Shown one piece after another: positions 46,877 through 64,000 of a stretch of DNA of 64,000 nt. A program made the translations under genes and the position numbers. How positions within the stretch are numbered: position 1 is the stretch's first letter; each line of letters starts with the position of its first letter. The stretch covers positions 806,001 to 870,000 of the forward strand of contig NW_025765037.1 in the NCBI RefSeq assembly GCF_003918875.1, written 5' to 3'. This stretch comes from Haliotis rubra (taxonomy: Eukaryota). The notes under the pieces were generated by a model. It saw only the letters and a program-made list of their open reading frames with translations. It ran no database searches and was not told the origin of the DNA.

Positions 46877-47056
46877 ATGATCTCAACAGCATGATGTCTG
46901 CTACAGGCCATCTTGGTATTACAGCAGGCTATGAGTCCTATAGTTGTAACCATTCGGTCTTCCGCAACAAGCATGGTAGTGAGGAAATCCTCATTCCCCC
47001 ACCCCATGACCATGCGCTTGAATTAGATTTTGATGTACCCTTATATCTATCTGATC

Positions 47057-47905
47057 TACCCTTGAAGGTCCGGGTTAGAATGTACCTTCAGTAACCCATG
47101 CTTGTCGTAGGAGGCGACTAACGGGATCGGGGGGTCAGGCTCGCTGGCTTGGTTGACACATGTCATCGGTTCTCAATTGCGCAGATCGATGCTCATGCTG
47201 TTGATCCAGACTCGATTATTTACAGACCGCCGCCATATAGCTGGAATATTGCTGAGTGCGGCGTCAAACTAAACTCACTCACTCTCTATTCGATCTGTGA
47301 TCTGGTTAACACTTGATCTACAAATTCCTGAAAATTTGTGTTAGAATTGGTTTTCAATAATCCAAGCTTAGCTTAAGTGAGTGAGTGAGTGTACTTTTAC
47401 ACCGCACTCAGCAATATTTCAGCTATACGGCGGCGGTTTGTAAATAATCGAGTTTAGACCAGAAATCCAGTGATTAACATCATGAGCATCGAAACAAGTC
47501 AGCGAGCCTGACCACCCGGTCCCGTTAGTCGCCTCTTCCGACAAACATTGGTTACTGAAGATCAATTTTAACCTGGATCTTCACATGTGTTGTCTAGATA
47601 AAAGGTGATCCGTAAGATAGTCAGACCATACATTAACATTAACTTACGACTGTCTTAGCGCTCATCGTATCCCAATTGCTTAGATCGATGCTCATAAATG
47701 TTAACAACCCGCTGGGCCAGTGAGCATACAGTGAGCCAGTGAGCCAGTGAGCATACAGAGTGAGTGAGTGAGTTTAGTTTTACGCCGCACTCAGCAATAT
47801 TCCAGCTATATGGCGGCGGTCTGTAAATAATCGAGTCTGGACCAGACAATCCAGTGATCAACAGCATGAGCATCGATCTGCGCAATTGGGAACCGATGAC
47901 ATGTG
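47057..47905. mobile_element. Cluster of family B copies (47057-47284 +, 47377-47585 -, 47758-47905 -) just upstream of the Calx/EGF/ZP start
   Basis: Repeated family B matches in both orientations. Confidence 0.8.
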
Positions 47906-48005
47906 AGCATACAGACATTTAGATACAAACACAATGGTAGCATATACATATTCTAGGAATGTAACCTGTATTGGCCGTTTCTTGAGGGCTGACTGACATC
48001 AGGAC

Positions 48006-48060
48006 ATGATGAAGATGTTGGCGCTACTTGTCCTTGGACTCTGTGTTCAGCACGTTAGGG
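48006..48060 (+). CDS. Calx/EGF/ZP exon 1, signal peptide [18 protein letters not shown]
   Basis: ATG, hydrophobic core, GTGAGT donor in phase 1. Confidence 0.8.
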
Positions 48061-51000
48061 GTGAGTTAAAGCGTGGGTTCATGTTGAGTAACACAGTCAG
48101 CAATATTCCACCTATACTACTCGAAATAAGTTAGGGACACCGGTACTTTTCTATTACTATCGTTCATCGGTGTTTGGAAGGCGGAATATGCAAGGATCTA
48201 AGATAATTGTTGCACTTCACGAAGAAATGGTGCACGAGGAAGTATTTATGTTACATTTTACCGACTATGTCGGTGTTTTGTGCAATTCTGTAATTGGTAT
48301 GCTACTATTTGTCATGTGACCAGGGGCGGTGGGGTAGCCTAATGGTTAAAGCGTTGGCTCGTCACGCCGAAGACCCGGTTCGAATCCCCACATGGGTACA
48401 ATGTGTGAAGCCCATTTCGGGTGTCCCCCGCCGTGATGTTGCTGGAATATTGCTAAAAGCGGCATAAAACCATACTCAGTCAGTCAGTCAGTCATGGGAC
48501 CATTAATCTTTTAGCGCCTCACAGGCAGCTTGGGTTATCCAGGGTAAAAATAATTGTGCGCTATGAGCACGCTGTCGGTGTGGATCTAGCGCAATATAAA
48601 TGGACTAATTATTATTATTAACTATCAATTTCAGATAATTGTATGATTGTACTTCACGATGAAATATTACTCGAAGACACATATTTGAACTGATCTTTCC
48701 TTGGAATCTAACTGAAACATGCATTTCATAATCTAACTTAGTTTCAGGTCTGTATTCACATAATCGATGCTAAATTACTTCTCAAGTTGTAAAACTCTGA
48801 AATTTTCAACATGGTTTGTTGAACATTCATTGAACACATTATCTTAAAAATTCAATTTGGTTTCCTGAAGGACCTATTTATTACTTTGAATATTTTATTA
48901 TATACTACCCATCAAATGATTAGACTCACTTAAAGCACTCACTATATGATATGTATATATATATGGTTACATCGATGGTGAATTTCTCCACTAACTTGGG
49001 GAACCAACTGCAAACCTTATGCAGATAAATTGCACGAGGATCATGCATCAAATTTCTGAATGTGCAAATATCATGCATGTGAAAAGCTGCGTTTTGGTGT
49101 AAAGGTTTGTTAAGAATTCGCCAATTTTCACTGAGTTTCATCATTTATTGAACCTATGACAATAATCTTTTCAACGTGACGAATTTGTTTTACAATACAT
49201 CGTTCCATGTGTAAACAGTATCTTTAAACAGTATGGAATATTTTTCAAAATCTAGTTAAGGATATTTGACTGAAGTAAGCAGCTACATTAACGCTAATGA
49301 GTCTAAACTTTTGATGGGTAGTATAGTTATGATAACCAGGCCTGTATGCACTGAAAGAAAAAATTCCAGGGAAACGAAAGTCGTGTACTGTGTTTCATTA
49401 CAAGCAATAGATATTGATGTTGAACAAACAGTACGACGTTCATTAGTCGAATGACAAGTACATGGACACTGCGATTGTTTCTGTAGGTGGCGCTGTTAGT
49501 TTGTTCCCAAGCGGCATATCTGTGTCACCGACGGCTGTAGGAGAGGGGACAGCGACACACACCATCACCGTCACCAGAGACGCTCCATACACCAGCGAGC
49601 TGACCTTTCAAGTAAGATCACCACTGATGATTACAGTGATGAAGAAGTGATGATAAATGTTGGGGGTAGGGATGCTGGGAGCGGCTGTTGAAGATGGATG
49701 CCAGTAAAGGAAAAGAAATATGAAGACACGAGGAGAGCGTTGGGTAGTTTGGGTGTAGGGATGGGAGGACAGGTGGGTAGTGTGGATGTAGAGATGGGAC
49801 GGCAGGTGGGTGGTATGGGTGTAGGGATGGGAGGACCTGGAGTAGTGTGGGTGTAGGGATGGGGGGACCTGGTGTTGTGTTGGTGTAGGGAGGGGTGGAC
49901 AGGTGGGTAGTGTGGGTGTAGGGATGGGAGGACCTGGGGTATTGTGGGTGTAGGGATGGGAGGACATATGGGTAGTGTGGATGTAGAGATGGGAGGACAG
50001 GTGTGTAGTGTGGGTGTAGAGATGGGAGGACAGGTGGGTAGTGTGGGTGTAGAGATGGGAGGACAGGTGGGTAGTGTAGTGGGTGTAGAGGTGGGAGGAC
50101 AGGTGGGTAGTGTGGGTGTAGAGATGGGAGGACAGGTGGGTAGTGTGGGTGTAGAGATGGGAGGACAGGGGGGTAGTGTGGGTGTAGAGATGGGAGGACA
50201 GGTGGGTAGTGTGGGTGTAGAGATGGGAGGACAGGTGGGTAGTGTGGGTGTAGAGATGGGAGGACAGGTGGGTAGTGTGGGTGTAGAGATGGGAGGACAG
50301 GTGGGTAGTGTGGGTGTAGGGATGGGAGGACAGGTGGGTAGTGTGGGTGTAGAGATGGGAGGACAGGTGGGTAGTGTGGGTGTAGGGATGGGAGGACAGG
50401 TAGGTGGAGTGTGGGAGGTAGAGATGGGACAGGGAGGGACAGGAGTGTGGGGGGAGGACAGGTGGGTAGTGTGGGTGTAGAGATGGGAGGACAGGTGGCT
50501 AGTGTGGGTGTAGGGATGGGAGGACAGGGAGGTAGTGTGGGTGTAGAGATGGAAGGACAGGTGGGTAGTGTGGGTGTAGCGATGGAAGTGTCGGGTGATA
50601 GTGTAGTGGTTGGTGTCGGGTTTAGAGTCGGTAATTAGGGGCGGGGTGAGTGATTCATCGAAGGGAGGATAGGGCGATGTTTGCTCTTGGTATTTTTGTT
50701 TATCGAGACAGTTTTTCAATTATTCTAACGGCTATTATTGTTAGGAAATGTTTTGATTGCTCTTCTGAAAAATATACAACCTGATTTCACAAGGTGAGAC
50801 CAGTTTGAATACATCATAACTGTATGCATGTTGTGTAGTATCAGACAGTGGACAACACGGCAACTGCAGGCAGCGACTACAACGTCATCAGCTCCACCAG
50901 CGGCTCTATTGGAAGTGGTAGCCCGTCAACCACCTTCACCGTCACCATCATCGGCGACTCGGTGAGCATCCGTAGCCATGGAAACACAGATGACTGAGTA

Positions 51001-54000
51001 TCTCAATTAGCGTGAGGCCTCATCACCTCTGAGATAATAAAACTATCGCGCAGATAAAAACAGGATTAGGGACAAGTTGTTGGCATATTACCTATGTATT
51101 ACATACTACTCATAACAGCAATACTAAAAGTGATTGAGTGATTGAGTGATTGAGTGAGTGAGTGAGTTAGGTAGCAATATTCCAGCAATATCACGGCGGG
51201 GGATACCAGAAAGGGCCTTCACACATTGTAACCATGTGGGGAATCGAACCCGGGTCTTCGGCGTGATGAGCAAACGCTTTAACCACTAGACTACCCCACC
51301 GCCCCAGCAATCCTAAGAGGTTTACAGACGACCGTGTCCCCGTCCGACGGGAAATACTGACTGAACATAAATGACAGGATACATTTGTGTAAGATATATG
51401 GTGAGCATAGCTTTGGTTGGTTGGTTGATTGCAATATCCCAGCTATATGGCGGCGGTCTGTAAATAATCGAGTCTGGACAAGGAATGGTGGCAGCCTAGC
51501 ACTGATCCCAGTATACGCCACAGATCAACCCTACAAAGACCCCCGAAAATAAAAAATAAATAAAAACAAATATAAAAAACAGCCCTATAATATACCCTGA
51601 AAATCCCACACCACCCCTAAAATAAACCCAGAATATCGAACACCAAAGTCGAATCCCAGAACCCAGAATGCTCAACAGACCAGACCTACAATGACCCCGG
51701 TATATCCAACAGACCAGACTTACAATGACACCAGTATATCCAACAGACCAGCCCTACAATGACCCCAGTATATCCAACAGACCAGACCTACAATGACCCC
51801 AATATATCCAACAGACCAGTCCTACAATGACCTCAGTATATCCAACAGACCAGACCTACAATGACCCCAGTATATCCAACAGACCAGACCTACAATGACC
51901 CCAGTATATCCAACAGACCAGACTTACAATGACCCCAGTATATCCAACAGACCAGACCTACAATGACCACAGTATATTCAACAGACCAGTCCTACAATGA
52001 CCCCAGTATATCCAACAGACCAGACCTACAGTGACCCAGGTATATCGAACAGACCAGCCCTTCAATGACCCCAGTATATCCAACAGACCAGACCTACATT
52101 GACCCCATGACTATATCGCGGCGGTCTGTAAATAATCGAGTTTTGGTCCAGACAATCCAGGGATCAACAGCATGATCATCAATCTGGTAATTCGGAACCG
52201 ATGACATGTGTCAACCAAGTCAGCGAGCCTGACCATCCCATCCCGTTAGTCGCCTCTTTTGACAAGCATGGGTTACTGAAGACCAATTCTAACCCGGATC
52301 TTCACGTGTCGGTGAGCATAGCAACTACGATGACTCGTTGACATGGGTTACTGAAGACCAATTCTATCCCGGATATTCACGTGTCGGTGAGCATAGCAAC
52401 TACGATGACTCGTTGACATGGATCGATGAAGATCACTAGATTGTCTGTTCCGGCTTCGATTGTTTACAGACCAAAGTCATAGAGCTGGCAAAATGCTGAG
52501 TGAAAAACAGATACACAAACGTAGCGTCAGTTATGTCTTTAAAAAAACGTAACACTGAGTGATTGCTCAGAATCCTCGATCATTTGTGCACTGCCAGATT
52601 TACCAAACTGAACCAGTACCTTTTGTCCCGCTTTGTGTTCTGTTGTCTATCGTATATTTCGTCATATTATTAGGGGCGTTTGTATAGCTTGGTGGTTAAT
52701 GCATTTGCTCGTCACGCCGAAGACCCGGGCTCGATTCCCCACATGGGTACATATATGAAGCCCATTGCATTGTCCCCCGCCTAATATTGCAAAAAGCGGC
52801 GTAAAACTAAACTCGTTCACTCACTAAATGATAAATATCCGAACTCACTCGAATTTTATCATGCCGTTAAATATTCATTACCTAAACTTATCCTGGTGTA
52901 ACAGAGTGTATGTTTTCTCGTCTTTGTCTTTTTAACATCGGTTTGTTTCCAGGTCGTGGATCCCGATGAGACTTTTCTGTTGATGTTCACGTCATTCAGC
53001 AACACCGTCCCCGCCTTCAATGTCACAGTCACCATCACTGACGATGAAGGTAGGTTCATGTCCTTTATGGGGTGAGGTGAGGTGAGGTGAAATTGGTTTA
53101 ACGTCGTGCTTGAGAATATTTCGCTCATATGACGACGTGCATGCGTGTGTATGTGTATGTGCGGTTGCTTGTACTAGCCCAGACTGAAGCTGGTTTTATA
53201 GTGCTGAGATACTACGCCACAGTGAAGCATGAATACCCACTCAGACACATTATACTGACTCCGAGCCGACCAGTCCTCGTTGTACCCATTAATGCCGAGC
53301 GCCAGGCAGGGACCAACAAGTACCATATTTTAACGTCTTTTGGTATGACGCGGCCGGGGATCGATCCCGCAACCTTCCGCACTCCGGGCGGACGCTCTAA
53401 CCACTACACCACGGAGGCGGTCTCCTATATGGGGCGGTAGGGTAGCCTGTAGACTATCAATTAGTCTCTGAAATGAACATGTTTTACAGAAAAAAGCTCA
53501 TAGTGAAAAAAAATATAATGAAAAGGAGCCCTTAGACTTTCTTCATTTTCAGAAGTGAAGTTTAATGACAGGTGTATGCGCAACCTACATATGCTTATTG
53601 CCCACACACCTGTTATAAAAATTCACTTTCCTTTTTCACAATGGTGGTTTGTCGTTTTGTAGTATCAGTGATTTCGACTTGGTATCGTTTCTTTGTCCCG
53701 TTAGTTTATTTCACCGTCGCAATACGGACGGTGGATGTTCTTAATTATGTCCTGGTTAATTAATTGGAACATGCCTCCATTGCCACAGTGGCACCCGTCT
53801 CTCTGACGTACCCTACAACGCTCACTCGTCTGGAGAGTGTTGGCAACTACAACATCACCATTTCCCGGAGCGACCTATCAACTCACGCCTTCACCGTTAA
53901 CGTCACCACCAGCGACGGCACCGCGGTGGCTGGACAGGACTACAACAGCATCATGTCCATTCTTTCCTTCGGCTCCAGTGAAAACTCCAAGACAGTACAA

Positions 54001-57000
54001 GTTGAAGTGCTGGATGACAGTGTTAGGAAGTTTATTAATAACATAAACAATTGTCTGTAGCGTTCTATACCTTCACTAAGAAGGCATGACCGTGATAATT
54101 TGATACACTTATAAAGGACAAGGAAAAAAGTCTATTTCTTTTCCAATTTAAGGATTTAAATACTAACGAAATATCATTGATGCTTGATTGGCGTGCTGCA
54201 ATTTCGAGATTCCCACCTTGTTTACAGATCGAGGAGAGCTCGGAGACCTTCACTATAGATCTGTCTGGGACCGATATCGTAAGCGGTACCATCACCTTCC
54301 AAATAACAGATGATGATGGTATGTACAGTCATATGACAGATCTGTTCGGCAGAGCTTTCTCTAAATGATAAATCCCCCCAGGGTTCAAATTGTGAAGACC
54401 ATTTGTGGTGTCCCCCGCAAAAAGCAAGATTTTATGGATGTCAACTTCTTTATTGTAACACTCTTGCTTTTCCTCTGTTGGCATCCATAAAATCTTGCTT
54501 TTCCTATGTATTCCACTTCTAAATACCCTTCAAAGATACCTGATGAAGGAGCAAGCATACACTCCGAAACGTCGTGTTATTCACAATAAAGAAGTTGACA
54601 TCCATAAATCTTGCTTTTCCTTCAAAGATTTGAAGCTGATACACCTTGACATAACTGGAATACTATTTAAAGTGGCGTTCAACCCAGCTAATTAACTGCT
54701 TAAATCTGTATGTTTTAACTGTGAAAATATGTCATAATTAAAATGTGGATACATCTAAATATATATAATACATAGATGACGAGTATTATTCAATGGGGAT
54801 GCTACAATCCTTTCTAAAATACGAAAATCACCTCTATTCTTTTAAATGAGGATTTCTGTCTCTCAGGCTTGTGCTTGTGCCTGATCGTTTGTTAATACTG
54901 TATTGCAATACTGATCGGTGTATGTCTCAATTGAAGATCCGGGTAAAATTACTTTCGTAATAGACGACTAATGCTTGTGCTTGTGTTTGTGCTTGTGTGC
55001 TTGTGCTTGTGCTTGTAATCGTATACCAGTTGCGTAGATCGATGACTGTCAAACACTAGATTTTCAGCGCTAGACTCATTTATTTATAGAAATATAGCGG
55101 GAATTTCGTTTAACAAACAAACAAACAGAGTAACACAAACGTATATATATGATCTCCTGATGTCTGTACAGCTCGCGATGACTTTCATTGTGGACGAGGC
55201 GTCAGCCAACCATGTCTGAATGGAGGAACCTGCCAAGCTGATGGCGAGTGTATGTGCCCGTCCGGTTACCTGGCCCCTAACTGTGAGGTAGACCCAAGTA
55301 CGTATTCATATCTTACATAAGAATTCCTATCGATAGATAGTTACAAAATGTGTGTTTTTCGTGTTCTTGGACATGGAAATTATAATCAAAATTGAATGCT
55401 ATTTTTTTCGAATAAAAGGAGCTCTGCTCCGCAAGCGATTATACCATTATACGATTATGCACAAGACTCGTAAACCAGCCCTTAAATGAAACACCAAAGA
55501 AACTTTAAAAAAGGCATTATTCAATTTCAGATTCGATATGAGGGACCTCGTCATTAAAAGAACGTGTTTTCAGCTTTATTTATTTGGATACAAAGGCTAT
55601 CTTCATATTGCCGTGCCTCTTTAGTCGCTTTGCAATCGTTGCCAAACAAACGTCAAAGAATATCTCACCCTCGTGTCTGTTGACATCAAATATATCCGTA
55701 TGAGTTGATAAAAGGGAGACAACTCCGAGGCTTACTCACTTTTGTCAACAAGTGGTGATATATTTGATATCAAAAGACACGAAGGTGAAATTCTGTTTAT
55801 CATCCAATATCATGCTTGATTTGTCGTTCAAGAGAAATTTAAAACGAAACGTCACCTGTAACAAGTTCATTTGAAGACTTGCGTATGAATTCATCCAAGT
55901 AAACAAGAGAGATGGAAGAGGGAAGGAGTGACACCATTACGTCATAAAAGCAAGCACATAACAGAGCTAACATTTATTTTGCTTTTAATTTTTAAAAAAA
56001 ATTTTATGAACAAAAATAACTCATTGCGGTGGCCATCTTTGTTTACAGCTGAAGGAGATGAAAGTAGTCCGAAAATATTGACCAATCAGCAATTAGCTCT
56101 AAACGTACAAAAACGATAATTCCTAGGAACTTTCTACAAGCGATATCTCTCTGGAAACCAGTATTGGATGATAAATCACAATATCAACAAGTCCTGTGTT
56201 CGTCAGGGAACAAGTGTCATTATGATGGTGCAGGTGTTACTCATTCCCTACTTAGCAAAGAGAAATAACTGTCTATCTATGACACACATATGATGTTTTA
56301 GCGCGACACAACGGGGCTGGATGCGACAACAGGTGTGGTGATAATGGCTGGTGCATTGCCGACTCGTCTTCCGGAAGTACACTAATTTCTTGCGTCTGCG
56401 CAGCCGGCTGGGCTGGAGACCGGTGTGATGAGCGAGCTTGTGAGTGACACGTGTTTATGCGAGATGTGCATTGTCTCTATTATGTCATGATCTTGACACA
56501 GATTCTAGAACAGTCTGGAAACTGTACTGTATGACGCAACTACCCATAATGCTAATGTTTCGACCAATCGGCAGCTATTTAGATGTGTTAACGTTTTACG
56601 AAAATGGAGGACTTCGAAAGTTCATATTACCACCTTTACATGAATTTTAGTATTTAGTCACTGGCACCAGTGACTGCTGTGTTGGTATCGGATGTTACGG
56701 GAAAACCAGGACATTTTTCTTTTTATGCAAGCACCTGGAATCAACGTTTCTCAACTATATTGCCTTTAAGACTCGGTGGTATCAGTTATAGCCGATAGTC
56801 GAGACTGGTTACGTTATGGCTTTTAAGCTTTACAGTTTTGCGTCAGGGGTATGTGTATGGGTGAATGCCATAGTATGATCTACATTTGGATCTTGTTTCA
56901 AAGATGAGTGTGTGAGAGAATTTACGAGCAAGGATGCCGAAAGAAGTCCCTGAATTTACGAAGATACCAATCTCCTCTCCTCAATCCAGAATATAATCAC

Positions 57001-60000
57001 TACGAATCCCTCGCTAAACGAATAATAATTACCACAGATCTCAAAAACATTTAGAAAAGGGTGCACCTTGTTGTCAAATCACTGAAATATGTTGAAACAA
57101 TTAAAACATATAAAGCATTTTTTTTAACCTGCACCCAATTTTTTATAAGATCAATCCGGGGGGCATATACGACTTTAGCGAGTTCCAAATACCGTCTAAA
57201 CAGACCCTGGAATCCGACGTACTAAAATGGGATGAAAGTGTCAACATGAGAAAACACTACAGCACTGTAAAATTCCTGAGTGCAGTAAACCAACTTGTTA
57301 CAGATTCCGTGCAGTGCAACACCAACAACTTCAGTGTGTGCATCACGCCGTATTCTATTGCCTCCTTCGTGGGCGTTGTCTACGTCAAGGACAAGAAGTC
57401 GACGGAGGGATGCGTGTTGTCGATGGCCCCAGCGGTCGCTGACCCCAGCGATGGTCTGTTAGACTGGTGCAAGGGCTACGCAGCGGTCATCGAATACAGC
57501 GGTGGCGCCTGCGGGGACTTTGGGCCCGTTATTAGTGTAAGTTTTCTCAGGAGGAATTTGTATATGATGAGTGAGTGAGTGAGTGAATTTAGTTTTAGCA
57601 ATATTCCACCACGGCGGGGAGACCAGAAATTGGCTTGATACATTGTACCTATGAGGGGAATCGAACCCGCGTGCTCGAACTGACGAGCAAACGCTTTAAC
57701 CACTAGGCCAGAAGAAAGCACTATTCCATGACAATGTAGATACCCAGGGTTAGAATTGGTCAACAGCAACCCATGCTTATCGTAAGATGCGGCTAACGGG
57801 ATCGGTTGGTCAGGCTCGCTTTGGTTGACACATGTAAAAAAAATGCACATGATTTTGACCACTGTCTGGAACCACACGAATACTTACAGACCGCCATAAT
57901 TTATCTGGAATGTTGCGGCGTTAAAAACGAACAAACAAACAAACAAAACGATGTATTAGAAAGAATGTCATCGATGTCATTGGGATCTGACGTTTGTCGA
58001 GTTTCAGCGACCTCAGTCTGGTTGCATTTTGCAAACGTTTGCAATGACAAATTTGTTGGACATGTCTCTATTTGTCATGCAGTTTACAAGCATTGTACCG
58101 AGGTAGCAGTATCACGTTCTTTACACACATCGACTGACCAACACATGTATCTGATAACCGGCTACTTCTTGGTGCAGGACAACACTACGTACGTCATGCA
58201 ACTGATCGTGCAGTACAGCAACGTCAGCGTCTTCTACACTGACGAGCTCGTGTCTTTTACGTGCAGCTTCAGAAACGACAGCCTGACGATCACCTCGGGT
58301 TCCACCATTAGTACCAACCCCTCAACGTGAGTCACAGTCTACACATCAGTGAGTGAGTGAGTGAGTGAGTGAGTGAGTGAGGCTTTACGTCGCTTTTAGC
58401 AATATTACAGCAATATCACGACGGGAGACACCAGAAATGGGCTTCACACATTGTACCCATGTGGGGAATCGAACCCGGGTCTTAGGCGTGACGAGCAAAT
58501 GCTTTAACCACCAGGCTAACACACCGCCCACCTACCCATGGTGGCCTCTACTATCTTGGGTCACAACAATGACGAATGAACCCTTTTCCCACCGCCATAT
58601 AGCTGGAATATTGATGAGCGCGGCGTAAAACTAAACTCACTCACCATTTCCCAGATGTGCAGGTTCGATTTTGTACAGCTTCATCAGAGGTTGCTGAAGA
58701 ACCACTGCGTGAGAGTTTGTTTGAATGTTGTTTTACGCCGCACACAGCCATATTCCAGGTATATGACCTTGCTTTCACTAGGAGCGACAAAACCCTTTCC
58801 ATGTTCGTAAGAAATCACTGCTACAAAGCAGAGTCGATTGTGCAATTGGGACTATATCATGAGCCTATACTTATTTCAGCTGTTATACAGCTGTACGATG
58901 TTGTGCATTATTGGGTTGATATTTTCAGTACAATTCTAAAGAAACCGTCATGATATTGACGGAGAATAAGCGAGACTGAATCTACCAGTCTCAAATGTGT
59001 TTTATTGAATGAATATTTGAATATCTTTCAGTGCAATCCTAAGGACACATTCAAAATATTAACGGAGAATAAGCGAGAATTTGGAAGAACCGATTCGTGG
59101 CGATCATATTTTTCAAAACATTATTGGATTTCATTTCACAATCTTTCAGTGCAGTGCTAAAGAAACAGAACGCTGGCGGGTCTTTCATTCCGGCTTCTCT
59201 GTCAGTGACCGCGCCAGACAATACTCCAATCACTAGCTCCCTCAATCTTGGGGAGGAAATCAAGATCTGCGTCTCCGTCAATGATGGTACAGATAGCCTT
59301 CATGGCTGATTTGTTTCAAGATTATCAATAGTTCAAACTGAACATTAAATCCAAATTTCCTTATACACCTGTCGGTGAGAAACCTATATTCAACTTATGT
59401 GAGGGATCGAATCCCACGTCCATGATTGGTTACTCCAATGACCAGAGATCTAATTACTAAGATATTAAATGGAAACTATTCAAAATGGTGGGATATGTTA
59501 GCCTAGAGTTAAAAAATTCACACTGAAAACCAGAATTTGATTCCAATCACGGTTACTTGTGTGGTCTTTACTTGCGGTATATATATCAGACCGTTTAATT
59601 TTCGTTACCTTATAAAGTGTATTCACAAGATATCCATGTAAGTTAGCTTCATAAAAATATATTTTAAAGCCGCAAATAAATACATATACTGTTTCAGCAA
59701 CTGACTTCAAATCTGTCCTAATCCACCTCGTCATAATCAACAACACCCGCTCCGGCGCCGACTACAGACAAATGACCATCTACAAGGACGGGTAAATTAT
59801 TCATTCATATTTAGTCGTCCTTACAGAAGGGTAATCTTTCATGGTCCAGAAGACACTTCTAGTCCAGGCCCGTCATATATGTCTGACCCCGGAAACAACT
59901 GAAGCACATACTACATGCGGTGACTTTCTTTGAAATGTGTCCCTGTTCAATGCACATTGAATGGGTACCCGGTAGAATGAGATGTGACCTTCTTGAACCT

Positions 60001-63000
60001 AGGCAGCCGCGGCTGTATACTCCATTGGGACATATACGAGGGCTAACTGTTCCATTGGCTGGGGTAATAATAATATAGCTCTCTAAGTATTCTATAATTG
60101 ATCGATTTGGCAGATTGCAAATACACTGGCTTCTTCTTTTTATCAAAGAAATAGTTTCGATATCGAAGACAATCTATGAGCAAAATGTATGAGCAGACAA
60201 ACAAAACTTAACATGGTTTTGAATGACCTAGGACTGTCATTTAACTCTTGCCCAGTTTAATGCACCATTATCCTTACTAAATATCCGTGCAATACGTTGT
60301 GGTACACTTCAAACGTTCTTCAGGTAGGTAGACTCTCGTAGTCGCAAGCGGTCGTCCTCTTCTTCTAGATGTATCGATATATAGGGGGAAACTTCCTGAA
60401 ACATCTTATGTTCAAAGAAGGTGTAGTACGTGGCTGTAACGTGAATGTTCCCTCCAGTGAAGGATGGGTGTGGGTGTAACGTGAATGTTCCCTCCAGTGA
60501 AGGAGATGGGCGTGGTTGTAACGTGAAGGTTCCCTCCAGTGAAGGTGGTGTGGTTGTAACGTGAATGTTCCTCCAGTGAAATGGGTTCCCTAACGTGAAT
60601 GTTCCCTCCAGTGAAGGAGATGGGCGTGGTTGTAACGTGAATGTTCCCTCCAGTGAAACGTGAAGGATGGGATGGGCGTGGTTGTAACGTGAATGTTCCC
60701 TCCAGTGAAGGAGATGGGTGTGGTTGTAACGTGAATGTTCCCTCCAGTGAAGGAGATGGGTGTGGTTGTTACGTGAATGTTCCCTCCAGTGAAGGGATGG
60801 GTGTGGTTGTAACGTGAATGTTCCCTCCAGTGAAGGAGATGGGCGTGGTTGTAACGTGAATGTTCCCTCCAGTGAAGGAGATGGGCGTGGTTGTAACGTG
60901 AATGTTCCCTCCAGTGAAGGAGATGGGTGTGGTTGTAACGTGAATGTTCCCTCCAGTGAAGGAGATGGGTGTGGTTGTAACGTGAATGTTCCCTCCAGTG
61001 AAGGAGATGGGTGTGGTTGTAACGTGAATGTTCCCTCCAGTGAAGGATGGGCGTGGTTGTATCGTGAATGTTCCATCCAGTGAAGGAAATGGGTGTGGTT
61101 GTAACGTGAATGTTCCCTCCAGTGAAGGATGGGCGTGGTTGTATCGTGAATGTTCCATCCAGTGAAGGAGATGGGTGTTGTTGTAACGTGAAGGTTCCCT
61201 CCAGTGAAGGAGATGGGTGTAGTTGTAACGTGAATATTCCATCCAGTGAAGGATGGGCGTGGTTGTAATGTGAATATTCCATCCAGTGAAGGAGATGGGT
61301 GTGGTTGTAACGTGATTGTTCCCTGCAGTGAAGACGGGTGTGGTTGAAACGTGAAGGTTTTCAGTGAAGTGATCGGCGTGGTTATAACGTGAAGGTTCCC
61401 TCCAGTGAAGGGGATGGGTGTGGTTGAAACGTGAAGGTTTTCAGTGAAGTGATCGGCGTGGTTATAACGTGAAGGTTCCCTCCAATGAAGGAGATGGGTG
61501 TGGTTGTAACGTGAATGTTCCCTCCAGTGAAGGGGATGGGTGTGGTTGTAACATGAATGTTCCCTCCAGTGAAGGGGATGGGTGTGGTTGTAACGTGAAT
61601 GTTCCCTCCAGTGAAGGAGATGGGTGTGGTTGTAACGTGAATGTTCCCTCCAGTGAAGGAGATGGGTGTGGTTGTAACGTGAATGTTCCGTCCAATGAAG
61701 GGGATGGGTGTGGTTGTAACATGAAACTCCCTCTAGTGACGATGGATAGGGTTTGAAATGAATCTTCTCCCCTGTAAATGAAGTGTTTGACATTTCTAAA
61801 GGTGTACACCCACGAATGCGTCTGGAATCCTTGTGGCCGGATCCCCCTACTGGGACAGTGGCAACAAACATACAATGTGCATCAAGATCAAGGCCTTCTA
61901 CTTCGATGACGATGCGGGCCTGGCCAGTCCTCAACTGGGTGTTGTCGTCCAAGTTACAGTCTACACGAACGCAGGGGATGCTGTCCTGGTATGTATAGGG
62001 ACTGAGGGTCTCCTTGTTGTAGGTAGCCATAATTAGCTCGTATATGGTTGTCTTCTCAAGATAGACATATTGAACACTCACTTTACTACTCTCCACAAGC
62101 TCAAGAGTTACATAAGAGTTCAGCTGCTGGGAGTTAGCTCCCCTAGATTATGTTATGCATACATTACTGGTAGTAAATGATACACAGGAATAAACACCTG
62201 GGCCACTATGTACGTTATATTTCACTTTAACAATCAATATAATTGTAGTTGAGATAAATGGAATGTTATTGTTTATTATTGTTGTTACATGACGTTGATC
62301 TGTACATAATCGAGTCTGGACCTGACAATTCAGTGATTGACGCCTTGACCTGTGTACTTGGGACACGATGACATTTGTCAACCAAATCAGCGACAGTTTA
62401 ACGTGTAAAGACACAGTATCCTGAAGCCAGCCGACCAGTCCTTCATGTATCACCTTCATGCTTATTAGGGCCAGTCAGGGTAACAACAAGTGCCATCTTT
62501 AAAGAATACTGCCCTGATGTGTGTTGGGGTTAGAACCAACTACTCTTCGCACGATATTTGGGGAAACCTTCCCGATTTGTAAACGGCCTTGACGTGGGAA
62601 TCGAATATTATGGCCTTTAGTGATCTTCCACTGTTATACCACAGGGGACATCAGAAATGGGCATTCCACGTTGATATTTATTTGTTTCCCATCTCCCGCC
62701 CACCCTGATTTTAGATTTAATAATTAATTTTTTATTATCTCAATTTTTCCTGCCGCTGTTGAAGTGTATGGCCTGGTTTGATACACACATATAAAACGAC
62801 CAGGTCAGCTTGGTCTTTCATCCTCTATCTTATCAGAAAATATATTCGAAATCAAAGTGATTCCATCTACATCATGAATTAATAAAAAACCTATAACTAA
62901 TTGAGCTAGATTTTACAACATCATAACACATGTTACGTGATTAGTGAAAAACACTTACTAATTATTTATTTATAATTTTTCGCCCGCTCCCATGTTAGGT

Positions 63001-63232
63001 TAAGTTCGAGATGAGAAACACATAAAACATATATAGGCTGGCCATATTTGTGTCAGCATGATTCATGTCATGTAAAACTTATCTTCTGTCTTGACAAAGC
63101 TGACATGCAGCGGCATTGTACGCAGAAAGCGAGCAGCTTCGTCCCAGGAAGATGCTACTATGGGCACAGTGATTGTGCTGAACGGTGCAGGGACACCTGC
63201 AGACACAAAGACGGAAGCACCAAGGTTTCAAG
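48006..63232 (+). CDS. Secreted Calx-beta x2 / EGF x2 / ZP-domain protein, 14 exons in window, 3' end outside window
   Basis: Signal peptide exon; two Calx-beta repeats ([17 protein letters not shown]; [22 protein letters not shown]); two six-Cys EGF exons; ZP-N (VQC..GVVYVKD..C..CG..IVQY..D..TCSF); ZP-C (LGEEI..YKDGC..KAFYF); RRKR furin site and hydrophobic patch. All splice phases are compatible. Confidence 0.9.
48322..48493 (+). mobile_element. SINE family A
   Basis: Full match; flanked by GTCATG(T/G)GACCA. Confidence 0.85.
48903..49323. mobile_element. Tc1/mariner-type MITE, copy 2
   Basis: TIR TACTACCCATCAAA..TTAGACTCA / TGAGTCTAAACTTTTGATGGGTAGTA flanked by TA; interior aligns with 19535-19942. 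Confidence 0.8.
49487..49611 (+). CDS. exon 2, Calx-beta 1 N-part
   Basis: ctgtAG acceptor, GTAAGA donor; [14 protein letters not shown]. Confidence 0.85.
49740..50600. repeat. 33-bp G-rich minisatellite in Calx/EGF/ZP intron 2
   Basis: GGGTGTAGAGATGGGAGGACAGGTGGGTAGTGT. Confidence 0.93.
50839..50961 (+). CDS. exon 3, Calx-beta 1 core
   Basis: [14 protein letters not shown]...FTVTIIGDS; tgtAG acceptor, GTGAGC donor. Confidence 0.9.
51145..51305 (-). mobile_element. SINE family A
   Basis: Match with a small deletion in the tail. Confidence 0.8.
51412..52310 (-). mobile_element. Family B SINE interrupted by a 34-bp satellite block
   Basis: TSD GGTGAGCATAGC at 51400 and 52311; SINE segments 51413-51480 and 52111-52307. 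Confidence 0.78.
51670..52107. repeat. 34-bp minisatellite, inverted relative to 36275-37632
   Basis: CAACAGACCAGACCTACAATGACCCCAGTATATC. Confidence 0.93.
52673..52824 (+). mobile_element. SINE family A
   Basis: Diverged match. Confidence 0.78.
52953..53049 (+). CDS. exon 4, Calx-beta 1 C-part
   Basis: [12 protein letters not shown]...TVTITDDE; ttccAG acceptor, GTAGGT donor. Confidence 0.9.
53073..53421 (-). mobile_element. SINE family C, full length
   Basis: Reverse complement of 28886-29239; TSD TCCT(T/A)TATGGGG at 53061 and 53423. Confidence 0.88.
53789..54021 (+). CDS. exon 5, Calx-beta 2
   Basis: [12 protein letters not shown]...[12 protein letters not shown]...[20 protein letters not shown]; cacAG acceptor, GTTAGG donor. 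Confidence 0.9.
54228..54318 (+). CDS. exon 6, Calx-beta 2 C-part
   Basis: [13 protein letters not shown]...FQITDDD; tacAG acceptor, GTATGT donor. Confidence 0.9.
54419..54630 (+). mobile_element. Penelope-like pseudo-LTR insertion (partial tandem repeat plus inverted tail) inside a family A SINE
   Basis: catccataaatcttgcttttcc repeated at 54482 and 54599; 54419-54456 is the inverse of 54583-54618; contains a hammerhead. Confidence 0.75.
54535..54578 (+). ncRNA. Minimal type I hammerhead ribozyme (Penelope-associated type)
   Basis: Stem I GAUAC/GUGUU, core CUGAUGA(+A), stem II GGAG/CUCC with a 10-nt loop, GAAA, loopless palindromic stem III ACGU, cleavage triplet GUC ending 54573. Confidence 0.7.
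55172..55297 (+). CDS. exon 7, EGF-like 1
   Basis: [33 protein letters not shown], phase 1/1. Confidence 0.92.
55658..56175. repeat. Compound inverted-repeat element
   Basis: 55658-55696 is inverse to 55757-55793, and 55796-55810 is inverse to 56161-56175. Confidence 0.6.
56302..56439 (+). CDS. exon 8, EGF-like 2
   Basis: [36 protein letters not shown], phase 1/1. Confidence 0.92.
57304..57536 (+). CDS. exon 9, ZP-N first part
   Basis: [36 protein letters not shown]; tacAG acceptor, GTAAGT donor. Confidence 0.88.
57569..57708 (-). mobile_element. SINE family A
   Basis: Diverged match. Confidence 0.75.
57745..57945 (+). mobile_element. SINE-like family B, diverged
   Basis: CCAGGGTTAGAATTGG..(AAAC)n tail. 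Confidence 0.7.
58178..58326 (+). CDS. exon 10, ZP-N second part
   Basis: [27 protein letters not shown]; tgcAG acceptor, GTGAGT donor. Confidence 0.88.
58349..58530 (-). mobile_element. SINE family A
   Basis: Long (GTGA)n tail, full body. Confidence 0.82.
59150..59286 (+). CDS. exon 11, ZP linker / ZP-C start
   Basis: [31 protein letters not shown]; phase 2/1. Confidence 0.85.
59698..59791 (+). CDS. exon 12, ZP-C
   Basis: [29 protein letters not shown]; phase 1/2. Confidence 0.85.
60430..61740. repeat. 42-bp minisatellite in Calx/EGF/ZP intron 12
   Basis: GTTGTAACGTGAATGTTCCCTCCAGTGAAGGAGATGGGTGTG. Confidence 0.95.
61802..61988 (+). CDS. exon 13, ZP-C
   Basis: [33 protein letters not shown]; weak AAG acceptor, GTATGT donor, phase 2/0. 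Confidence 0.82.
63100..63232 (+). CDS. exon 14, ZP end with furin site and external hydrophobic patch
   Basis: [29 protein letters not shown]; AAG acceptor, GTGAGG donor. Confidence 0.82.
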
Positions 63233-63381
63233 GTGAGGTCGCCATACCGAACACGTTGAATATCAGATGAAGAGTATAAGAAGTTACCAGCCAGAGGAAC
63301 GTGCGCCTAAATCGATGGACAGTTTCAGGTTTATATGTCCAGTTTATTGTCGTTGGCGAAACGACAGAGTAATTGTTAATG

Positions 63382-63683
63382 GAGTGAGTGAGTATCGTTT
63401 TACACCGCATTTTAGCATAATACCAGCAATATCACGGCGGGGGACACCAGAAATGGGCTTTACACATTGTACCCATGTGGGGAATCGAACCCGGGTCTTC
63501 GGTGTGACGAGCGAACGCTTTAACCACTAGGCTACCCCACCGCCCCAAATTGTTAATGGAGAGTGAGTTTAGTTTTACGCCGCTTTTAGAAACATTGCAG
63601 CAGTATTACGGCGGAGACACCAGAAATGGGCTTCACACATTGTACCCATGTGGGGAATCAAACACGGGTCTTCGGCGTGACAC
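63382..63683 (-). mobile_element. Two adjacent family A SINEs
   Basis: 63382-63546 with TSD AATTGTTAATGGAG, then a truncated copy 63561-63683. Confidence 0.82.
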
Positions 63684-64000
63684 CGTCCTGTTAATAGAGA
63701 AATCGTAATAATCACTGATGGAGTGAAGTGGATCATTACATTTTAGGTAACAGGAATAGACATGTCTGTTTTTGATGGACTTGTATATGTAGGTAGTAGA
63801 GTAATATTTTTAGCCACATGTTTGTTACGAATATTAATAGTTAAATCGCTCTCATGTCTTCCGTCGCGCTTGTTTGGTACAATACTTTCCACGGATTGAA
63901 GATATGTATTCCAATCTCAATTAAAAATTTGCTGTCTCACCTCTGAGCACAGGGGCTAAGTTATTTCCTGTATCCATACACCTAATATGTGTCCTCCCTT

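What the first reader, a model, noticed from the sequence alone, without database searches (positions are those of the whole stretch)
48006..63232. Calx-beta + EGF + ZP protein: a polymer-forming matrix protein with predicted calcium-binding heads
Seen: 14 phase-compatible exons, mostly missed by the ORF track, give signal peptide - Calx-beta - Calx-beta - EGF - EGF - ZP-N - ZP-C - RRKR - hydrophobic patch. Known: ZP modules polymerise into filaments after cleavage at the furin site; two-EGF plus ZP proteins are described as molluscan shell-matrix proteins; Calx-beta is the Ca-binding fold of Na/Ca exchangers, integrin beta4, ADGRV1 and FRAS/FREM. Inference: I do not recall this combination being characterised. 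It could display Ca-binding domains along an extracellular filament (shell, periostracum, egg coat or sensory matrix). The Calx repeats start and end on phase-1 introns like the EGF exons, which fits exon shuffling onto an EGF-ZP gene.
Basis: partly seen in the sequence, partly recalled or inferred. Interest (0 to 1): 0.75.

Follow-up and report, generated by a model that had tools for sequence, protein, structure and literature searches.

The report
Abalone Calx-beta/EGF/ZP membrane-anchored matrix gene
This is a real, intact abalone gene for a secreted, membrane-anchored protein that joins two calcium-binding-type (Calx-beta) domains and two EGF domains to a filament-forming zona-pellucida module; the combination is undescribed in the searched literature, and its tissue and function are untested.

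Summary
Window 48006-63232 (+) carries 14 GT-AG exons with compatible phases and no stops. A 15th exon lies about 3.2 kb past exon 14, outside the window, and adds the membrane anchor, tail and stop (705 codons with the stop).

All 15 exons align in order with a 703-aa RefSeq prediction from Haliotis rufescens ("uncharacterized protein LOC124136007"). The overall dN/dS is 0.23.

The domain order is signal peptide, Calx-beta x2, EGF x2, ZP-N, ZP-C, RRKR, hydrophobic strand, TM.
- Calx-beta and EGF pass Pfam.
- The ZP module is invisible to Pfam Zona_pellucida. It is supported by AlphaFold models, whose best PDB matches are uromodulin, endoglin, ZP3/ZP1, betaglycan and ZP2. Sub-threshold VERL_C/CUT_N hits and language-model neighbours agree.
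- Calx-2 keeps every Ca-ligand position of NCX1 CBD1.

The gene belongs to a tandemly expanded family: at least 10 loci in this genome (H. rubra) and 8 clusters, all from Haliotis. The nearest other ZP-N exons in the genome sit in EGF-EGF-ZP loci without Calx exons, which fits the exon-shuffling idea.

No RNA data could be reached, so expression, polymerisation and Ca binding remain inferred. I rate it a new variant of a known kind, of moderate interest.

The scan did not report this architecture before on other DNA.

The parts
48006..48060 (+). Exon 1: start codon and signal peptide (n-region, hydrophobic core, V-R-G end); phase-1 donor
   Evidence: aligns with P0001 residues 1-19. The signal peptide is judged by eye, as no predictor was available.
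49487..49611 (+). Exon 2: first third of Calx-beta 1. The acceptor is homologous to the H. rufescens one; this species has 8 extra codons after it.
   Evidence: family Calx1 HMM hit.
50839..50961 (+). Exon 3: middle of Calx-beta 1 (the T-A-G-S-D-Y core)
   Evidence: Pfam Calx-beta 18.8 bits on the exon alone.
52953..53049 (+). Exon 4: end of Calx-beta 1 (acidic D-P-D-E-T-F loop and I-T-D-D-E end); phase-1 donor at the Calx1/Calx2 boundary
   Evidence: 58-61% identical exon in paralogues.
53789..54021 (+). Exon 5: most of Calx-beta 2, including the positions equivalent to NCX1 E385, D421 and D446/D447
   Evidence: Pfam Calx-beta 53.7 bits; aligns with CALX and NCX1 CBD1 at E 1e-10 to 1e-9.
54228..54318 (+). 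Exon 6: end of Calx-beta 2 (I-E-E-S-S-E-T-F loop at 54228-54251; I-T-D-D-D at 54303-54317); phase-1 donor
55172..55282 (+). Exon 7: EGF 1, a 1-1 phase module
   Evidence: Pfam EGF 24.6 bits.
56302..56439 (+). Exon 8: EGF 2, a 1-1 phase module
   Evidence: Pfam EGF_Teneurin 31.4 bits.
57304..57536 (+). Exon 9: first two thirds of ZP-N (five of its six invariant Cys)
   Evidence: The split codon TAT=Y matches the orthologue. The ZP-N model (pLDDT 88.6) matches uromodulin ZP-N at TM 0.57-0.60. Weak CUT_N hit.
58178..58326 (+). Exon 10: last strands of ZP-N (sixth invariant Cys) and start of the interdomain linker
59150..59286 (+). Exon 11: linker and first strands of ZP-C (the region of the internal hydrophobic patch)
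59698..59791 (+). Exon 12: ZP-C, middle
61802..61988 (+). Exon 13: ZP-C, two invariant Cys and the F-x-F strand
   Evidence: 35% identical exon in paralogues.
63100..63232 (+). Exon 14: last ZP-C Cys, consensus furin site R-R-K-R (63121-63132) and an external-hydrophobic-patch-like strand (63157-63180). It ends in a phase-1 donor. Exon 15 (TM, tail, stop) lies outside the window at C147:872446-872654.
   Evidence: R..R invariant in 9 family proteins; strand predicted, low pLDDT.

Best explanation
What it is. This is an intact 15-exon gene of the blacklip abalone (Haliotis rubra). It encodes a roughly 704-residue type-I membrane precursor with this order: signal peptide, two tandem Calx-beta domains, two EGF domains, a divergent ZP module (ZP-N plus ZP-C), a furin-type site (RRKR), a hydrophobic beta-strand, a TM helix and a short basic tail.

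What is shown: the gene structure, the domain order, purifying selection, and membership of a tandemly expanded family found so far only in Haliotis.

What is inferred from established ZP biology (uromodulin, ZP3):
- The precursor reaches the apical surface.
- A proprotein convertase cuts at RRKR.
- The hydrophobic strand leaves ZP-C.
- The ZP modules polymerise head-to-tail into extracellular filaments, from which the Calx-Calx-EGF-EGF arms project.

What is inferred from the NCX1 CBD1/CBD12 structures: the acidic clusters at the far end of each Calx domain bind Ca2+. These clusters lie at the Calx1/Calx2 and Calx2/EGF1 junctions. At seawater or extrapallial Ca levels they would be permanently filled, so Ca would stiffen the arm rather than act as a sensor.

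Likely origin: a phase-1 Calx-beta cassette was added in front of an EGF-EGF-ZP gene of the molluscan EGFZP type, and the gene was then duplicated in tandem.

The tissue (mantle/shell, egg coat or another apical matrix) is unknown.
For: Gene model:
- 15 GT-AG exons, 2115 nt, no stops, and module boundaries in phase 1.
- Collinear with RefSeq XP_046357697.1 of H. rufescens over all 703 residues.
- The same 15-exon layout is seen in the H. rufescens locus.

Selection: dN/dS is 0.23 overall. By part it is Calx1 0.30, Calx2 0.46, EGF 0.07, ZP-N 0.16 and ZP-C 0.23.

One transcript:
- There is a single signal-peptide exon, upstream of the Calx exons.
- RefSeq models in H. rufescens, H. cracherodii, H. 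rubra (a paralogue) and H. asinina all join Calx-beta to EGF and the C-terminal half.
- Collinear Calx-EGF-ZP exons occur at C1513 (two loci examined) and at C1557.

Domains:
- Pfam Calx-beta scores 53.7 bits on window exon 5 and 100.7 bits on the orthologue's pair.
- ZP, whole module: Foldseek's top 16 PDB hits are all ZP modules (E 1e-6 to 3e-4).
- ZP-C: VIA Z 10.9-11.6 at rmsd 2.8-3.9 A over 130-146 residues, to endoglin, betaglycan and ZP2.
- ZP-N: a separate model (pLDDT 88.6) has almost only ZP-N domains in its top ~20 hits, with uromodulin at TM 0.57-0.60.
- Sub-threshold Pfam hits: VERL_C 21.6 bits and CUT_N about 15 bits.
- ESM-Atlas feature neighbours are all ZP clusters, scoring 0.88-0.93.

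Processing signals:
- The R..R of the furin site and the flanking Cys are invariant in 9 family proteins.
- A strand is predicted after the site.
- The TM helix is in exon 15.

Ca site: in the alignment with NCX1 CBD1, Calx2 keeps E385, D421, D446, D447, I449, E451, E454 and D498-500.

Origin: six EGF-EGF-ZP-N loci (C2086, C381) lack Calx exons in the 5.9-7.7 kb fetched upstream.
Against: - No transcript evidence could be obtained. The only runs holding the stretch are genomic DNA, whose contigs run through introns.
- Pfam Zona_pellucida and a family-profile search of PDB sequences do not recognise the C-terminal half.
- The full ZP model has only moderate confidence (pLDDT 62). The margin of ZP-C over generic Ig domains is about 2 Z units.
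- The hydrophobic strand after the furin site is modelled at low pLDDT and is not conserved in sequence across paralogues.
- Some ZP proteins (endoglin, betaglycan) do not polymerise. Shimizu et al. 2022 (PMC9290575) suggest that most EGFZP proteins stay at the cell surface.
- Calx1 has Gly at the D446 position.
- The main text of the H. laevigata shell-proteome paper has no EGF, ZP or Calx entry.
Confidence: 0.6

Rival explanations
1. The gene and architecture are as described, but the protein does not polymerise. It stays on the cell as a receptor, co-receptor or adhesion molecule, like endoglin or betaglycan, or as proposed for most EGFZP proteins. Any shedding is incidental.
For: The TM anchor and cytoplasmic tail are conserved in the family, and the tail is under constraint (dN/dS 0.47). 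Endoglin and betaglycan ZP-C are the top VIA matches. Shimizu et al. (PMC9290575) state that most EGFZP proteins probably remain at the cell surface.
Against: The RxxR site directly after the last ZP-C Cys is invariant in 9 paralogues, and a strand follows it. This is the precursor layout of polymerising ZP proteins. By my own knowledge, untested here, endoglin and betaglycan lack this layout. The ZP-N half is closest to uromodulin.
Confidence: 0.2
2. The C-terminal half is not a ZP module but a generic pair of Ig-like beta-sandwiches. The protein would then be a Calx-EGF-Ig-like membrane protein.
For: There is no Pfam Zona_pellucida hit and no PDB sequence-profile hit. Nanobody and scFv domains reach Z 9-9.6 against the ZP-C half. 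Foldseek E-values for the ZP-N model are only 0.02-0.1.
Against: The top ranks in three structure searches are ZP domains for both halves. Sub-threshold VERL_C and CUT_N hits and language-model neighbours point the same way. The furin site, hydrophobic strand and TM order are typical of ZP precursors.
Confidence: 0.06
3. The Calx exons and the EGF-ZP exons belong to separate transcripts, or the joined model is a gene-prediction artefact.
For: No RNA reads were available here. RefSeq models are predictions.
Against: Only one signal-peptide exon exists, upstream of the Calx exons. The phases match across the Calx2/EGF1 boundary. The same order is kept in diverged paralogues at 35-60% identity and in independent annotations of four species. 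Both parts are under purifying selection.
Confidence: 0.04
4. This copy is an unexpressed or decaying duplicate of the family.
For: The family is multi-copy. Synonymous divergence from the best H. rufescens match is high (dS 0.56), and the Calx part evolves faster.
Against: All 15 exons are open with canonical splice sites. dN/dS is 0.23, with EGF at 0.07 and ZP-N at 0.16.
Confidence: 0.05

Closest known systems
Molluscan EGFZP shell-matrix proteins (Lottia LUSP-17/EGFZP, Pinctada PfuEGFZP; Shimizu et al. 2022, PMC9290575)
   Same: Both have a signal peptide, two EGF domains, a ZP module, a basic furin-type site and a C-terminal TM. Both occur as tandem gene copies. NCBI names two abalone family members 'EGF-like domain-containing protein 2'. 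EGF-EGF-ZP loci without Calx exist in the same genome and hold the next-closest ZP-N exons.
   Different: This family has two (in some paralogues one) Calx-beta domains in front of the EGF pair, which that paper does not report (0 occurrences of 'Calx'). Its ZP module is below Pfam detection. Clade membership with Lottia and Pinctada EGFZP could not be tested, and mantle expression or presence in shell is unknown.
Uromodulin (and GP2, alpha-tectorin): polymerising ZP proteins with projecting N-terminal arms
   Same: EGF domains sit upstream of a ZP module. A consensus cleavage site is followed by an external hydrophobic patch and a membrane anchor. The ZP-N model is closest to uromodulin ZP-N, and the whole-module matches include uromodulin filaments.
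   Different: Sequence identity is only 12-18%. The anchor here is a TM helix, whereas uromodulin has a GPI anchor (my own knowledge). The arms here carry Calx-beta, where uromodulin has a D8C domain. Polymerisation is not shown here.
Na+/Ca2+ exchanger CBD1-CBD2 tandem (NCX1, Drosophila CALX)
   Same: Both have a tandem pair of Calx-beta domains with a short acidic linker. Calx2 keeps all Ca-ligand positions of CBD1.
   Different: The pair here is extracellular on a matrix protein, not in a cytosolic regulatory loop. At millimolar external Ca the sites would be structural, not regulatory. Calx1 lacks one ligand.
FRAS1/FREM and ADGRV1 extracellular Calx-beta arrays
   Same: Calx-beta is used as an extracellular module in matrix or adhesion proteins.
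   Different: Those are giant proteins with CSPG or many Calx repeats and no ZP module. This comparison rests on my own knowledge and was not tested here.
Abalone egg-coat ZP proteins (VERL, VEZPs)
   Same: They come from the same genus and are also membrane-anchored ZP precursors. There is a sub-threshold Pfam VERL_C match at 21.6 bits (cut-off 27.2) in two family members.
   Different: A family profile found no VERL or other ZP chain among PDB sequences. Whether VEZPs carry Calx or EGF domains was not established here. Presence of this family in the vitelline envelope is untested.

Membership tests
ZP-module proteins (polymerising type) | ZP-N fold (Ig-like sandwich with conserved Cys) | tested here: met
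   The AF2 model of orthologue residues 322-448 has pLDDT 88.6. Its top PDB hits are almost all ZP-N domains, with uromodulin at TM 0.57-0.60 and rmsd 3.3-3.5 A. Six Cys are invariant in 11 family sequences.
ZP-module proteins (polymerising type) | ZP-C fold | tested here: met
   VIA Z 10.9-11.6 at rmsd 2.8-3.9 A over 130-146 residues, to endoglin, betaglycan and ZP2 ZP-C. Foldseek's top 16 hits are all ZP modules. The model has only moderate confidence (pLDDT 62).
ZP-module proteins (polymerising type) | Recognition by sequence profiles (Pfam Zona_pellucida/ZP-N). This is a detection criterion, not a structural definition. | tested here: inconclusive
   No PF00100 hit on the exons, the orthologue or the family. 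Only sub-threshold hits: VERL_C 21.6 bits and CUT_N about 15 bits. The family profile finds no ZP chain among PDB sequences.
ZP-module proteins (polymerising type) | Consensus furin cleavage site after ZP-C, followed by an external hydrophobic patch and a membrane anchor | tested here: met
   RRKR lies at 63121-63132, and its R..R is invariant in 9 paralogues. A strand is predicted after it, at low pLDDT. The TM helix is in exon 15.
ZP-module proteins (polymerising type) | Actual cleavage and filament formation | not testable with these tools
   This needs expression in cells, EM or proteomics.
Molluscan EGFZP family (Shimizu 2022) | Architecture: signal peptide, 2 EGF, ZP, furin site, TM | tested here: met
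   All elements are present in that order, with an extra Calx-beta pair in front.
Molluscan EGFZP family (Shimizu 2022) | Falls in the EGFZP clade of ZP phylogeny with Lottia and Pinctada proteins | not testable with these tools
Molluscan EGFZP family (Shimizu 2022) | Expression in mantle epithelium or presence in the shell matrix | not testable with these tools
   No RNA runs were reachable. The main text of the H. laevigata shell-proteome paper lacks EGF, ZP and Calx terms.
Calx-beta domain (PF03160) | Profile match above the curated cut-off | tested here: met
   Window exon 5 scores 53.7 bits against a cut-off of 27. The orthologue's pair scores 100.7 bits in two stretches. Exon 5 also matches in the own-genome Pfam scan at 52.5 bits.
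Calx-beta domain (PF03160) | Ca-coordinating acidic residues of NCX1 CBD1 | tested here: met
   For Calx2 all ten positions are kept in the HMMER alignments to 3US9, 2DPK and 3RB7. In Calx1 the D446 position is Gly. The residue numbering of NCX1 comes from my own knowledge.
Calx-beta domain (PF03160) | Measured Ca2+ binding | not testable with these tools
   This needs recombinant protein.
Abalone VERL/VEZP egg-coat proteins | Sequence membership (VERL_C profile) or presence in the vitelline envelope | tested here: inconclusive
   VERL_C scores 21.6 bits against a cut-off of 27.2 in 2 of 9 members. No proteomic data were reachable.

The most novel reading that the evidence does not exclude
The family could be an abalone (or vetigastropod) invention in which permanently Ca-loaded Calx-beta arms are displayed at regular spacing along ZP filaments on the secreting epithelium. 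That would be a periodic acidic, Ca-presenting scaffold. It could template nacre or periostracum mineralisation, or in the egg coat it could set Ca-dependent hardening or sperm interaction. It would be a new functional class of ZP polymer, not just another mosaic.
Probability: 0.15. Interest if true: 0.65.

Novelty: new variant of a known kind. Interest (0 to 1): 0.42.

Why it matters
ZP modules are the general filament-forming unit of animal apical matrices such as egg coats, urine filaments, the tectorial membrane, insect and worm cuticle, and coral and mollusc skeleton matrices. What each polymer does is set by the domains it displays.

A ZP polymer displaying NCX-type Ca-binding domains has not been described in the searched literature. 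It occurs here in an animal studied as a model both for nacre formation and for egg-coat/sperm recognition, as a tandemly expanded family.

It is also a practical warning. The ZP half is invisible to Pfam, so databases show these proteins only as "Calx-beta + EGF, uncharacterized".

If expression places the family in the mantle or in the oocyte, it gives a concrete, testable candidate for a link between a membrane-anchored matrix and calcium. If not, it remains one more mosaic ZP protein.

Tried and rejected
- RNA evidence. The single run search returned three runs of one sample. Laying them on 52900-58400 showed contigs that run through introns, for example 53665-54452 and 56068-57704. They are genomic DNA about 2-3% diverged, so there is no splice evidence.
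- Word-index protein searches. The whole-orthologue search was swamped by bacterial Calx-beta proteins. The ZP-region search found only the query itself. The EGF2-ZP-TM profile found only three Haliotis proteins. So absence outside Haliotis rests mainly on the exhaustive phmmer search with the 83-aa ZP-N exon. That search would miss relatives below about 40% identity.
- Hits P0009-P0011 of that search are bacterial Ig-repeat proteins, not ZP-N arrays.
- A family profile against PDB sequences gave nothing meaningful.
- Alternative splice choices were rejected. Exon 9 starting at 57286 does not reproduce the orthologue's Tyr. Exon 2 starting at 49512 is out of frame with the strong exon-1 donor and is not the homologous acceptor.
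- A ZP-N exon tree of 15 loci (78 columns) groups the 8 close family copies (support 97/96). It cannot order the gain or loss of Calx.
- The spliced 704-residue product has no reference, so it was not sent to any search or folding tool. Searches were done exon by exon by reference, and the RefSeq orthologue P0001 served as proxy for whole-protein steps. Scripts used per-exon pieces and split codons only.
- No complex prediction was run.

Full report
**Source and setting.** The window is C147:806001-870000 of a 1.38-Gb mollusc assembly. An earlier scan note called the genome abalone. I confirmed the species as follows. Contig C1513 of this assembly is 1,443,598 bases long. A family protein named "LOC124278399 [Haliotis rubra]" sits on a contig of exactly that length. 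The finding lies in an AT-rich, repeat-laden region.

**Observation.** Stop-free segments on the + strand and GT/AG sites gave a 14-exon model between 48006 and 63232. I then found a full-length relative without joining any exons.
- The 83-aa ZP-N exon (window:57288-57536) was scored by phmmer against 1.84 billion representative proteins.
- It hit eight proteins at E<1e-10. The remaining three hits (E 5e-7 to 8e-5) are bacterial Ig-repeat proteins.
- All eight are Haliotis RefSeq predictions.
- The best is P0001 = XP_046357697.1, "uncharacterized protein LOC124136007" of H. rufescens. It is 703 aa and 86% identical over the exon.

A tblastn of P0001 against the window plus the next 10 kb gave one collinear hit per exon at 54-87% identity. 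It also revealed a 15th exon outside the window, at C147:872446-872654. That exon encodes a TM helix, a short basic tail and the stop.

The orthologue fixed two details. Exon 9 starts at 57304, because the split codon TAT=Tyr matches the orthologue. The exon-2 acceptor at 49487 is the homologous one, and H. rubra has 8 extra codons after it.

The final model has 15 exons, all GT-AG, 2115 nt and no internal stop. The spliced product itself was never sent to a tool. Searches were done exon by exon by reference, with P0001 as proxy for whole-protein steps.

**Domains.**
- Pfam on single exons gives Calx-beta 53.7 bits (exon 5) and 18.8 bits (exon 3), EGF 24.6 bits (exon 7) and EGF_Teneurin 31.4 bits (exon 8).
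- On P0001 the Calx-beta pair scores 100.7 bits in two stretches.
- Nothing in Pfam recognises the C-terminal 310 residues as Zona_pellucida. This holds for the exons, the orthologue and eight relatives.
- A family profile finds no ZP chain among PDB sequences.

The ZP assignment therefore rests on other evidence:
1. An AF2 model of P0001:322-634 with a 9-sequence alignment (pLDDT 62) has 16 top Foldseek PDB hits that are all ZP modules: uromodulin, endoglin and ZP3/ZP1 (E 1.4e-6 to 2.9e-4).
2. VIA-align gives Z 10.9-11.6 at rmsd 2.8-3.9 A over 130-146 residues for the ZP-C of endoglin, betaglycan and ZP2. Generic Ig domains reach about 9-9.6.
3. A separate ZP-N model (pLDDT 88.6, pTM 0.83) has almost only ZP-N domains among its first 21 hits. 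Uromodulin is best, at TM 0.57-0.60 and rmsd 3.3-3.5 A, although the E-values are weak.
4. Sub-threshold Pfam hits point the same way: VERL_C 21.6 bits (cut-off 27.2) and CUT_N about 15 bits.
5. Language-model feature neighbours in the ESM Atlas are all ZP clusters, scoring 0.88-0.93.
6. The context fits a ZP precursor. The last conserved Cys is followed by RRKR, then a predicted strand, then a TM helix. The two Arg of the R-x-x-R core are invariant in nine family proteins.

I take the ZP module as established at fold level. It is a divergent member.

**Calcium site.** HMMER alignments of the orthologue's Calx pair, and of window exon 5 alone, to NCX1 CBD1/CBD12 and Drosophila CALX give E 1e-17 to 1e-9. 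They place Calx2 residues on every Ca-ligand position of CBD1. By my own knowledge of NCX1 numbering these are E385, D421, D446, D447, I449, E451, E454 and D498-500.

In the window these are the [19 protein letters not shown] and I-T-D-D-D motifs of exons 5 and 6. Calx1 keeps most of them but has Gly at the D446 position.

These clusters lie at the C-terminal tip of each domain, that is, at the Calx1/Calx2 and Calx2/EGF1 junctions. Ca binding is therefore a reasonable prediction. In sea water it would probably be structural, stiffening the arm, rather than regulatory. This is inference and was not measured.

**One gene or two?** No RNA data could be reached. The three runs that hold the stretch are genomic DNA, and their contigs cross introns. 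Indirect evidence is strong:
- The only signal-peptide exon lies upstream of the Calx exons.
- Phases match across every module boundary.
- The same exon order recurs on C1513 in two paralogous loci at 35-61% exon identity, and on C1557.
- Independent RefSeq annotations of four Haliotis species join Calx-beta, EGF and the C-terminal half.
- The H. rufescens locus has the same 15 exons.
- Against that orthologue dN/dS is 0.23 over 684 codons. By part it is Calx1 0.30, Calx2 0.46, EGF 0.07, ZP-N 0.16, ZP-C 0.23 and TM/tail 0.47.

All parts are under purifying selection, and the Calx arms are the least constrained. dS is high (0.56) and the per-exon values are noisy.

**Family and origin.**
- In this genome the ZP-N exon has 8 further close copies at 51-58% identity, seven on C1513 and one on C1557. 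On C1513, Calx-like exons were found upstream of two of the seven copies. The C1557 locus has the full Calx-Calx-EGF-EGF-ZP-N exon order.
- A more distant Calx-EGF-ZP locus lies on C946.
- All eight 50%-identity clusters found in the 1.84-billion library are from Haliotis. Relatives below about 40% identity would have been missed.
- Paralogues vary. One has a single Calx domain (P0006, 544 aa), and one set of isoforms ends after ZP-N (P0008, 356 aa).
- The next-closest ZP-N exons (29-34% identity) lie in six loci on C2086 and C381. Each has two EGF exons 0.3-3 kb upstream. None has a Calx exon in the 5.9-7.7 kb fetched upstream of the first EGF exon, either by a family HMM or by Pfam. In the family genes the last Calx exon sits only 0.3-0.9 kb from EGF1.

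Calx1 (exons 2-4), Calx2 (5-6), EGF1 (7) and EGF2 (8) are each bounded by phase-1 introns. A ZP-N tree groups the close family (support 97/96) but cannot order gain against loss.

**Comparison with what is known.** The closest described family is the molluscan EGFZP group: signal peptide, 2 EGF, ZP, RRRR/RKRR site and TM. Its members are expressed in mantle and some are found in shell (Shimizu et al. 2022, PMC9290575). That paper reports two EGFZP genes in H. discus hannai and never mentions Calx.

NCBI names two family members "EGF-like domain-containing protein 2". No paper in the library holds both "Calx-beta" and "ZP domain". The one paper holding "Calx-beta" and "zona pellucida" is unrelated. 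The main text of the H. laevigata shell-proteome paper has no EGF, ZP or Calx term, which argues mildly against an abundant shell-matrix role in abalone.

Mechanistically the best analogue is uromodulin, where EGF-bearing arms project from a ZP filament after cleavage and loss of the external hydrophobic patch.

**Verdict.** Polymerisation, Ca binding and tissue remain inferred.

The gene already exists in public databases as an unnamed prediction, and ZP modules are known to combine with many N-terminal domains. I therefore rate it a new variant of a known kind with moderate interest (0.42), not a categorical novelty.

Noticed in passing
window 49741-50585, 51673-52107, 60430-61739: There are three intronic minisatellites: 33 bp x 26 copies, 34 bp x 13 and 42 bp x 32. 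They create the longest ORFs of the region on both strands (up to 595 aa), which are spurious and are not part of the gene.
   Followed up: partly
window 53084-53635, 54372-54739, 57500-57867 (also 48294-48467, 51124-51310, 58377-58531, 63416-63700): Very high-copy interspersed repeats sit in the introns. Summed contig depth is 1e4-7e6 in the DNA runs, against about 15-60 for unique sequence. They share a recurring open-frame motif, and false 'joints' between copies appear in the read tables.
   Followed up: partly
window 54535-54578: The hammerhead-ribozyme note of the scan (s1-333153) lies in intron 6, inside one of the high-copy repeats. Rfam gives no match at gathering threshold anywhere in 47000-64000.
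   Followed up: partly
L023:896-2584 and 8459-8761; L024:692-3065 and 9613-9837 (C946:1610500-1630499): This is a distant second kind of Calx-EGF-ZP gene. It includes a 563-aa open frame with a Calx-beta match. The combination may therefore be older than the C147/C1513 family.
   Followed up: partly
L017-L022 (C2086 near 1.038, 1.071 and 1.194 Mb; C381 near 82, 116 and 140 kb): Two clusters of EGF-EGF-ZP-N loci have no detectable Calx exons in the fetched upstream DNA. They are probably the canonical EGFZP-type genes of this genome, and there are more copies than the two reported for H. discus hannai.
   Followed up: partly
L027:40133-41729 (H. rufescens JALGQA010000004.1): In H. rufescens another family member (711 aa) lies tail-to-tail 8.4 kb downstream of the orthologue. 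In H. rubra no family exon is seen within 7.3 kb downstream of exon 15.
   Followed up: partly
P0008/P0021 (H. rufescens LOC124152911); H. rubra counterpart at L025 (C1557:1052000-1061999): Predicted isoforms of 356-357 aa carry Calx-beta, EGF and ZP-N but stop before ZP-C. They may be truncated models, or a secreted form that has ZP-N only.
   Followed up: no
window 52900-58400 against runs X1-X3: The only public runs holding the stretch are DNA of one sample, about 2-3% diverged from the window. This could be another individual or a sister species. The differences that were listed lie mostly in introns.
   Followed up: no
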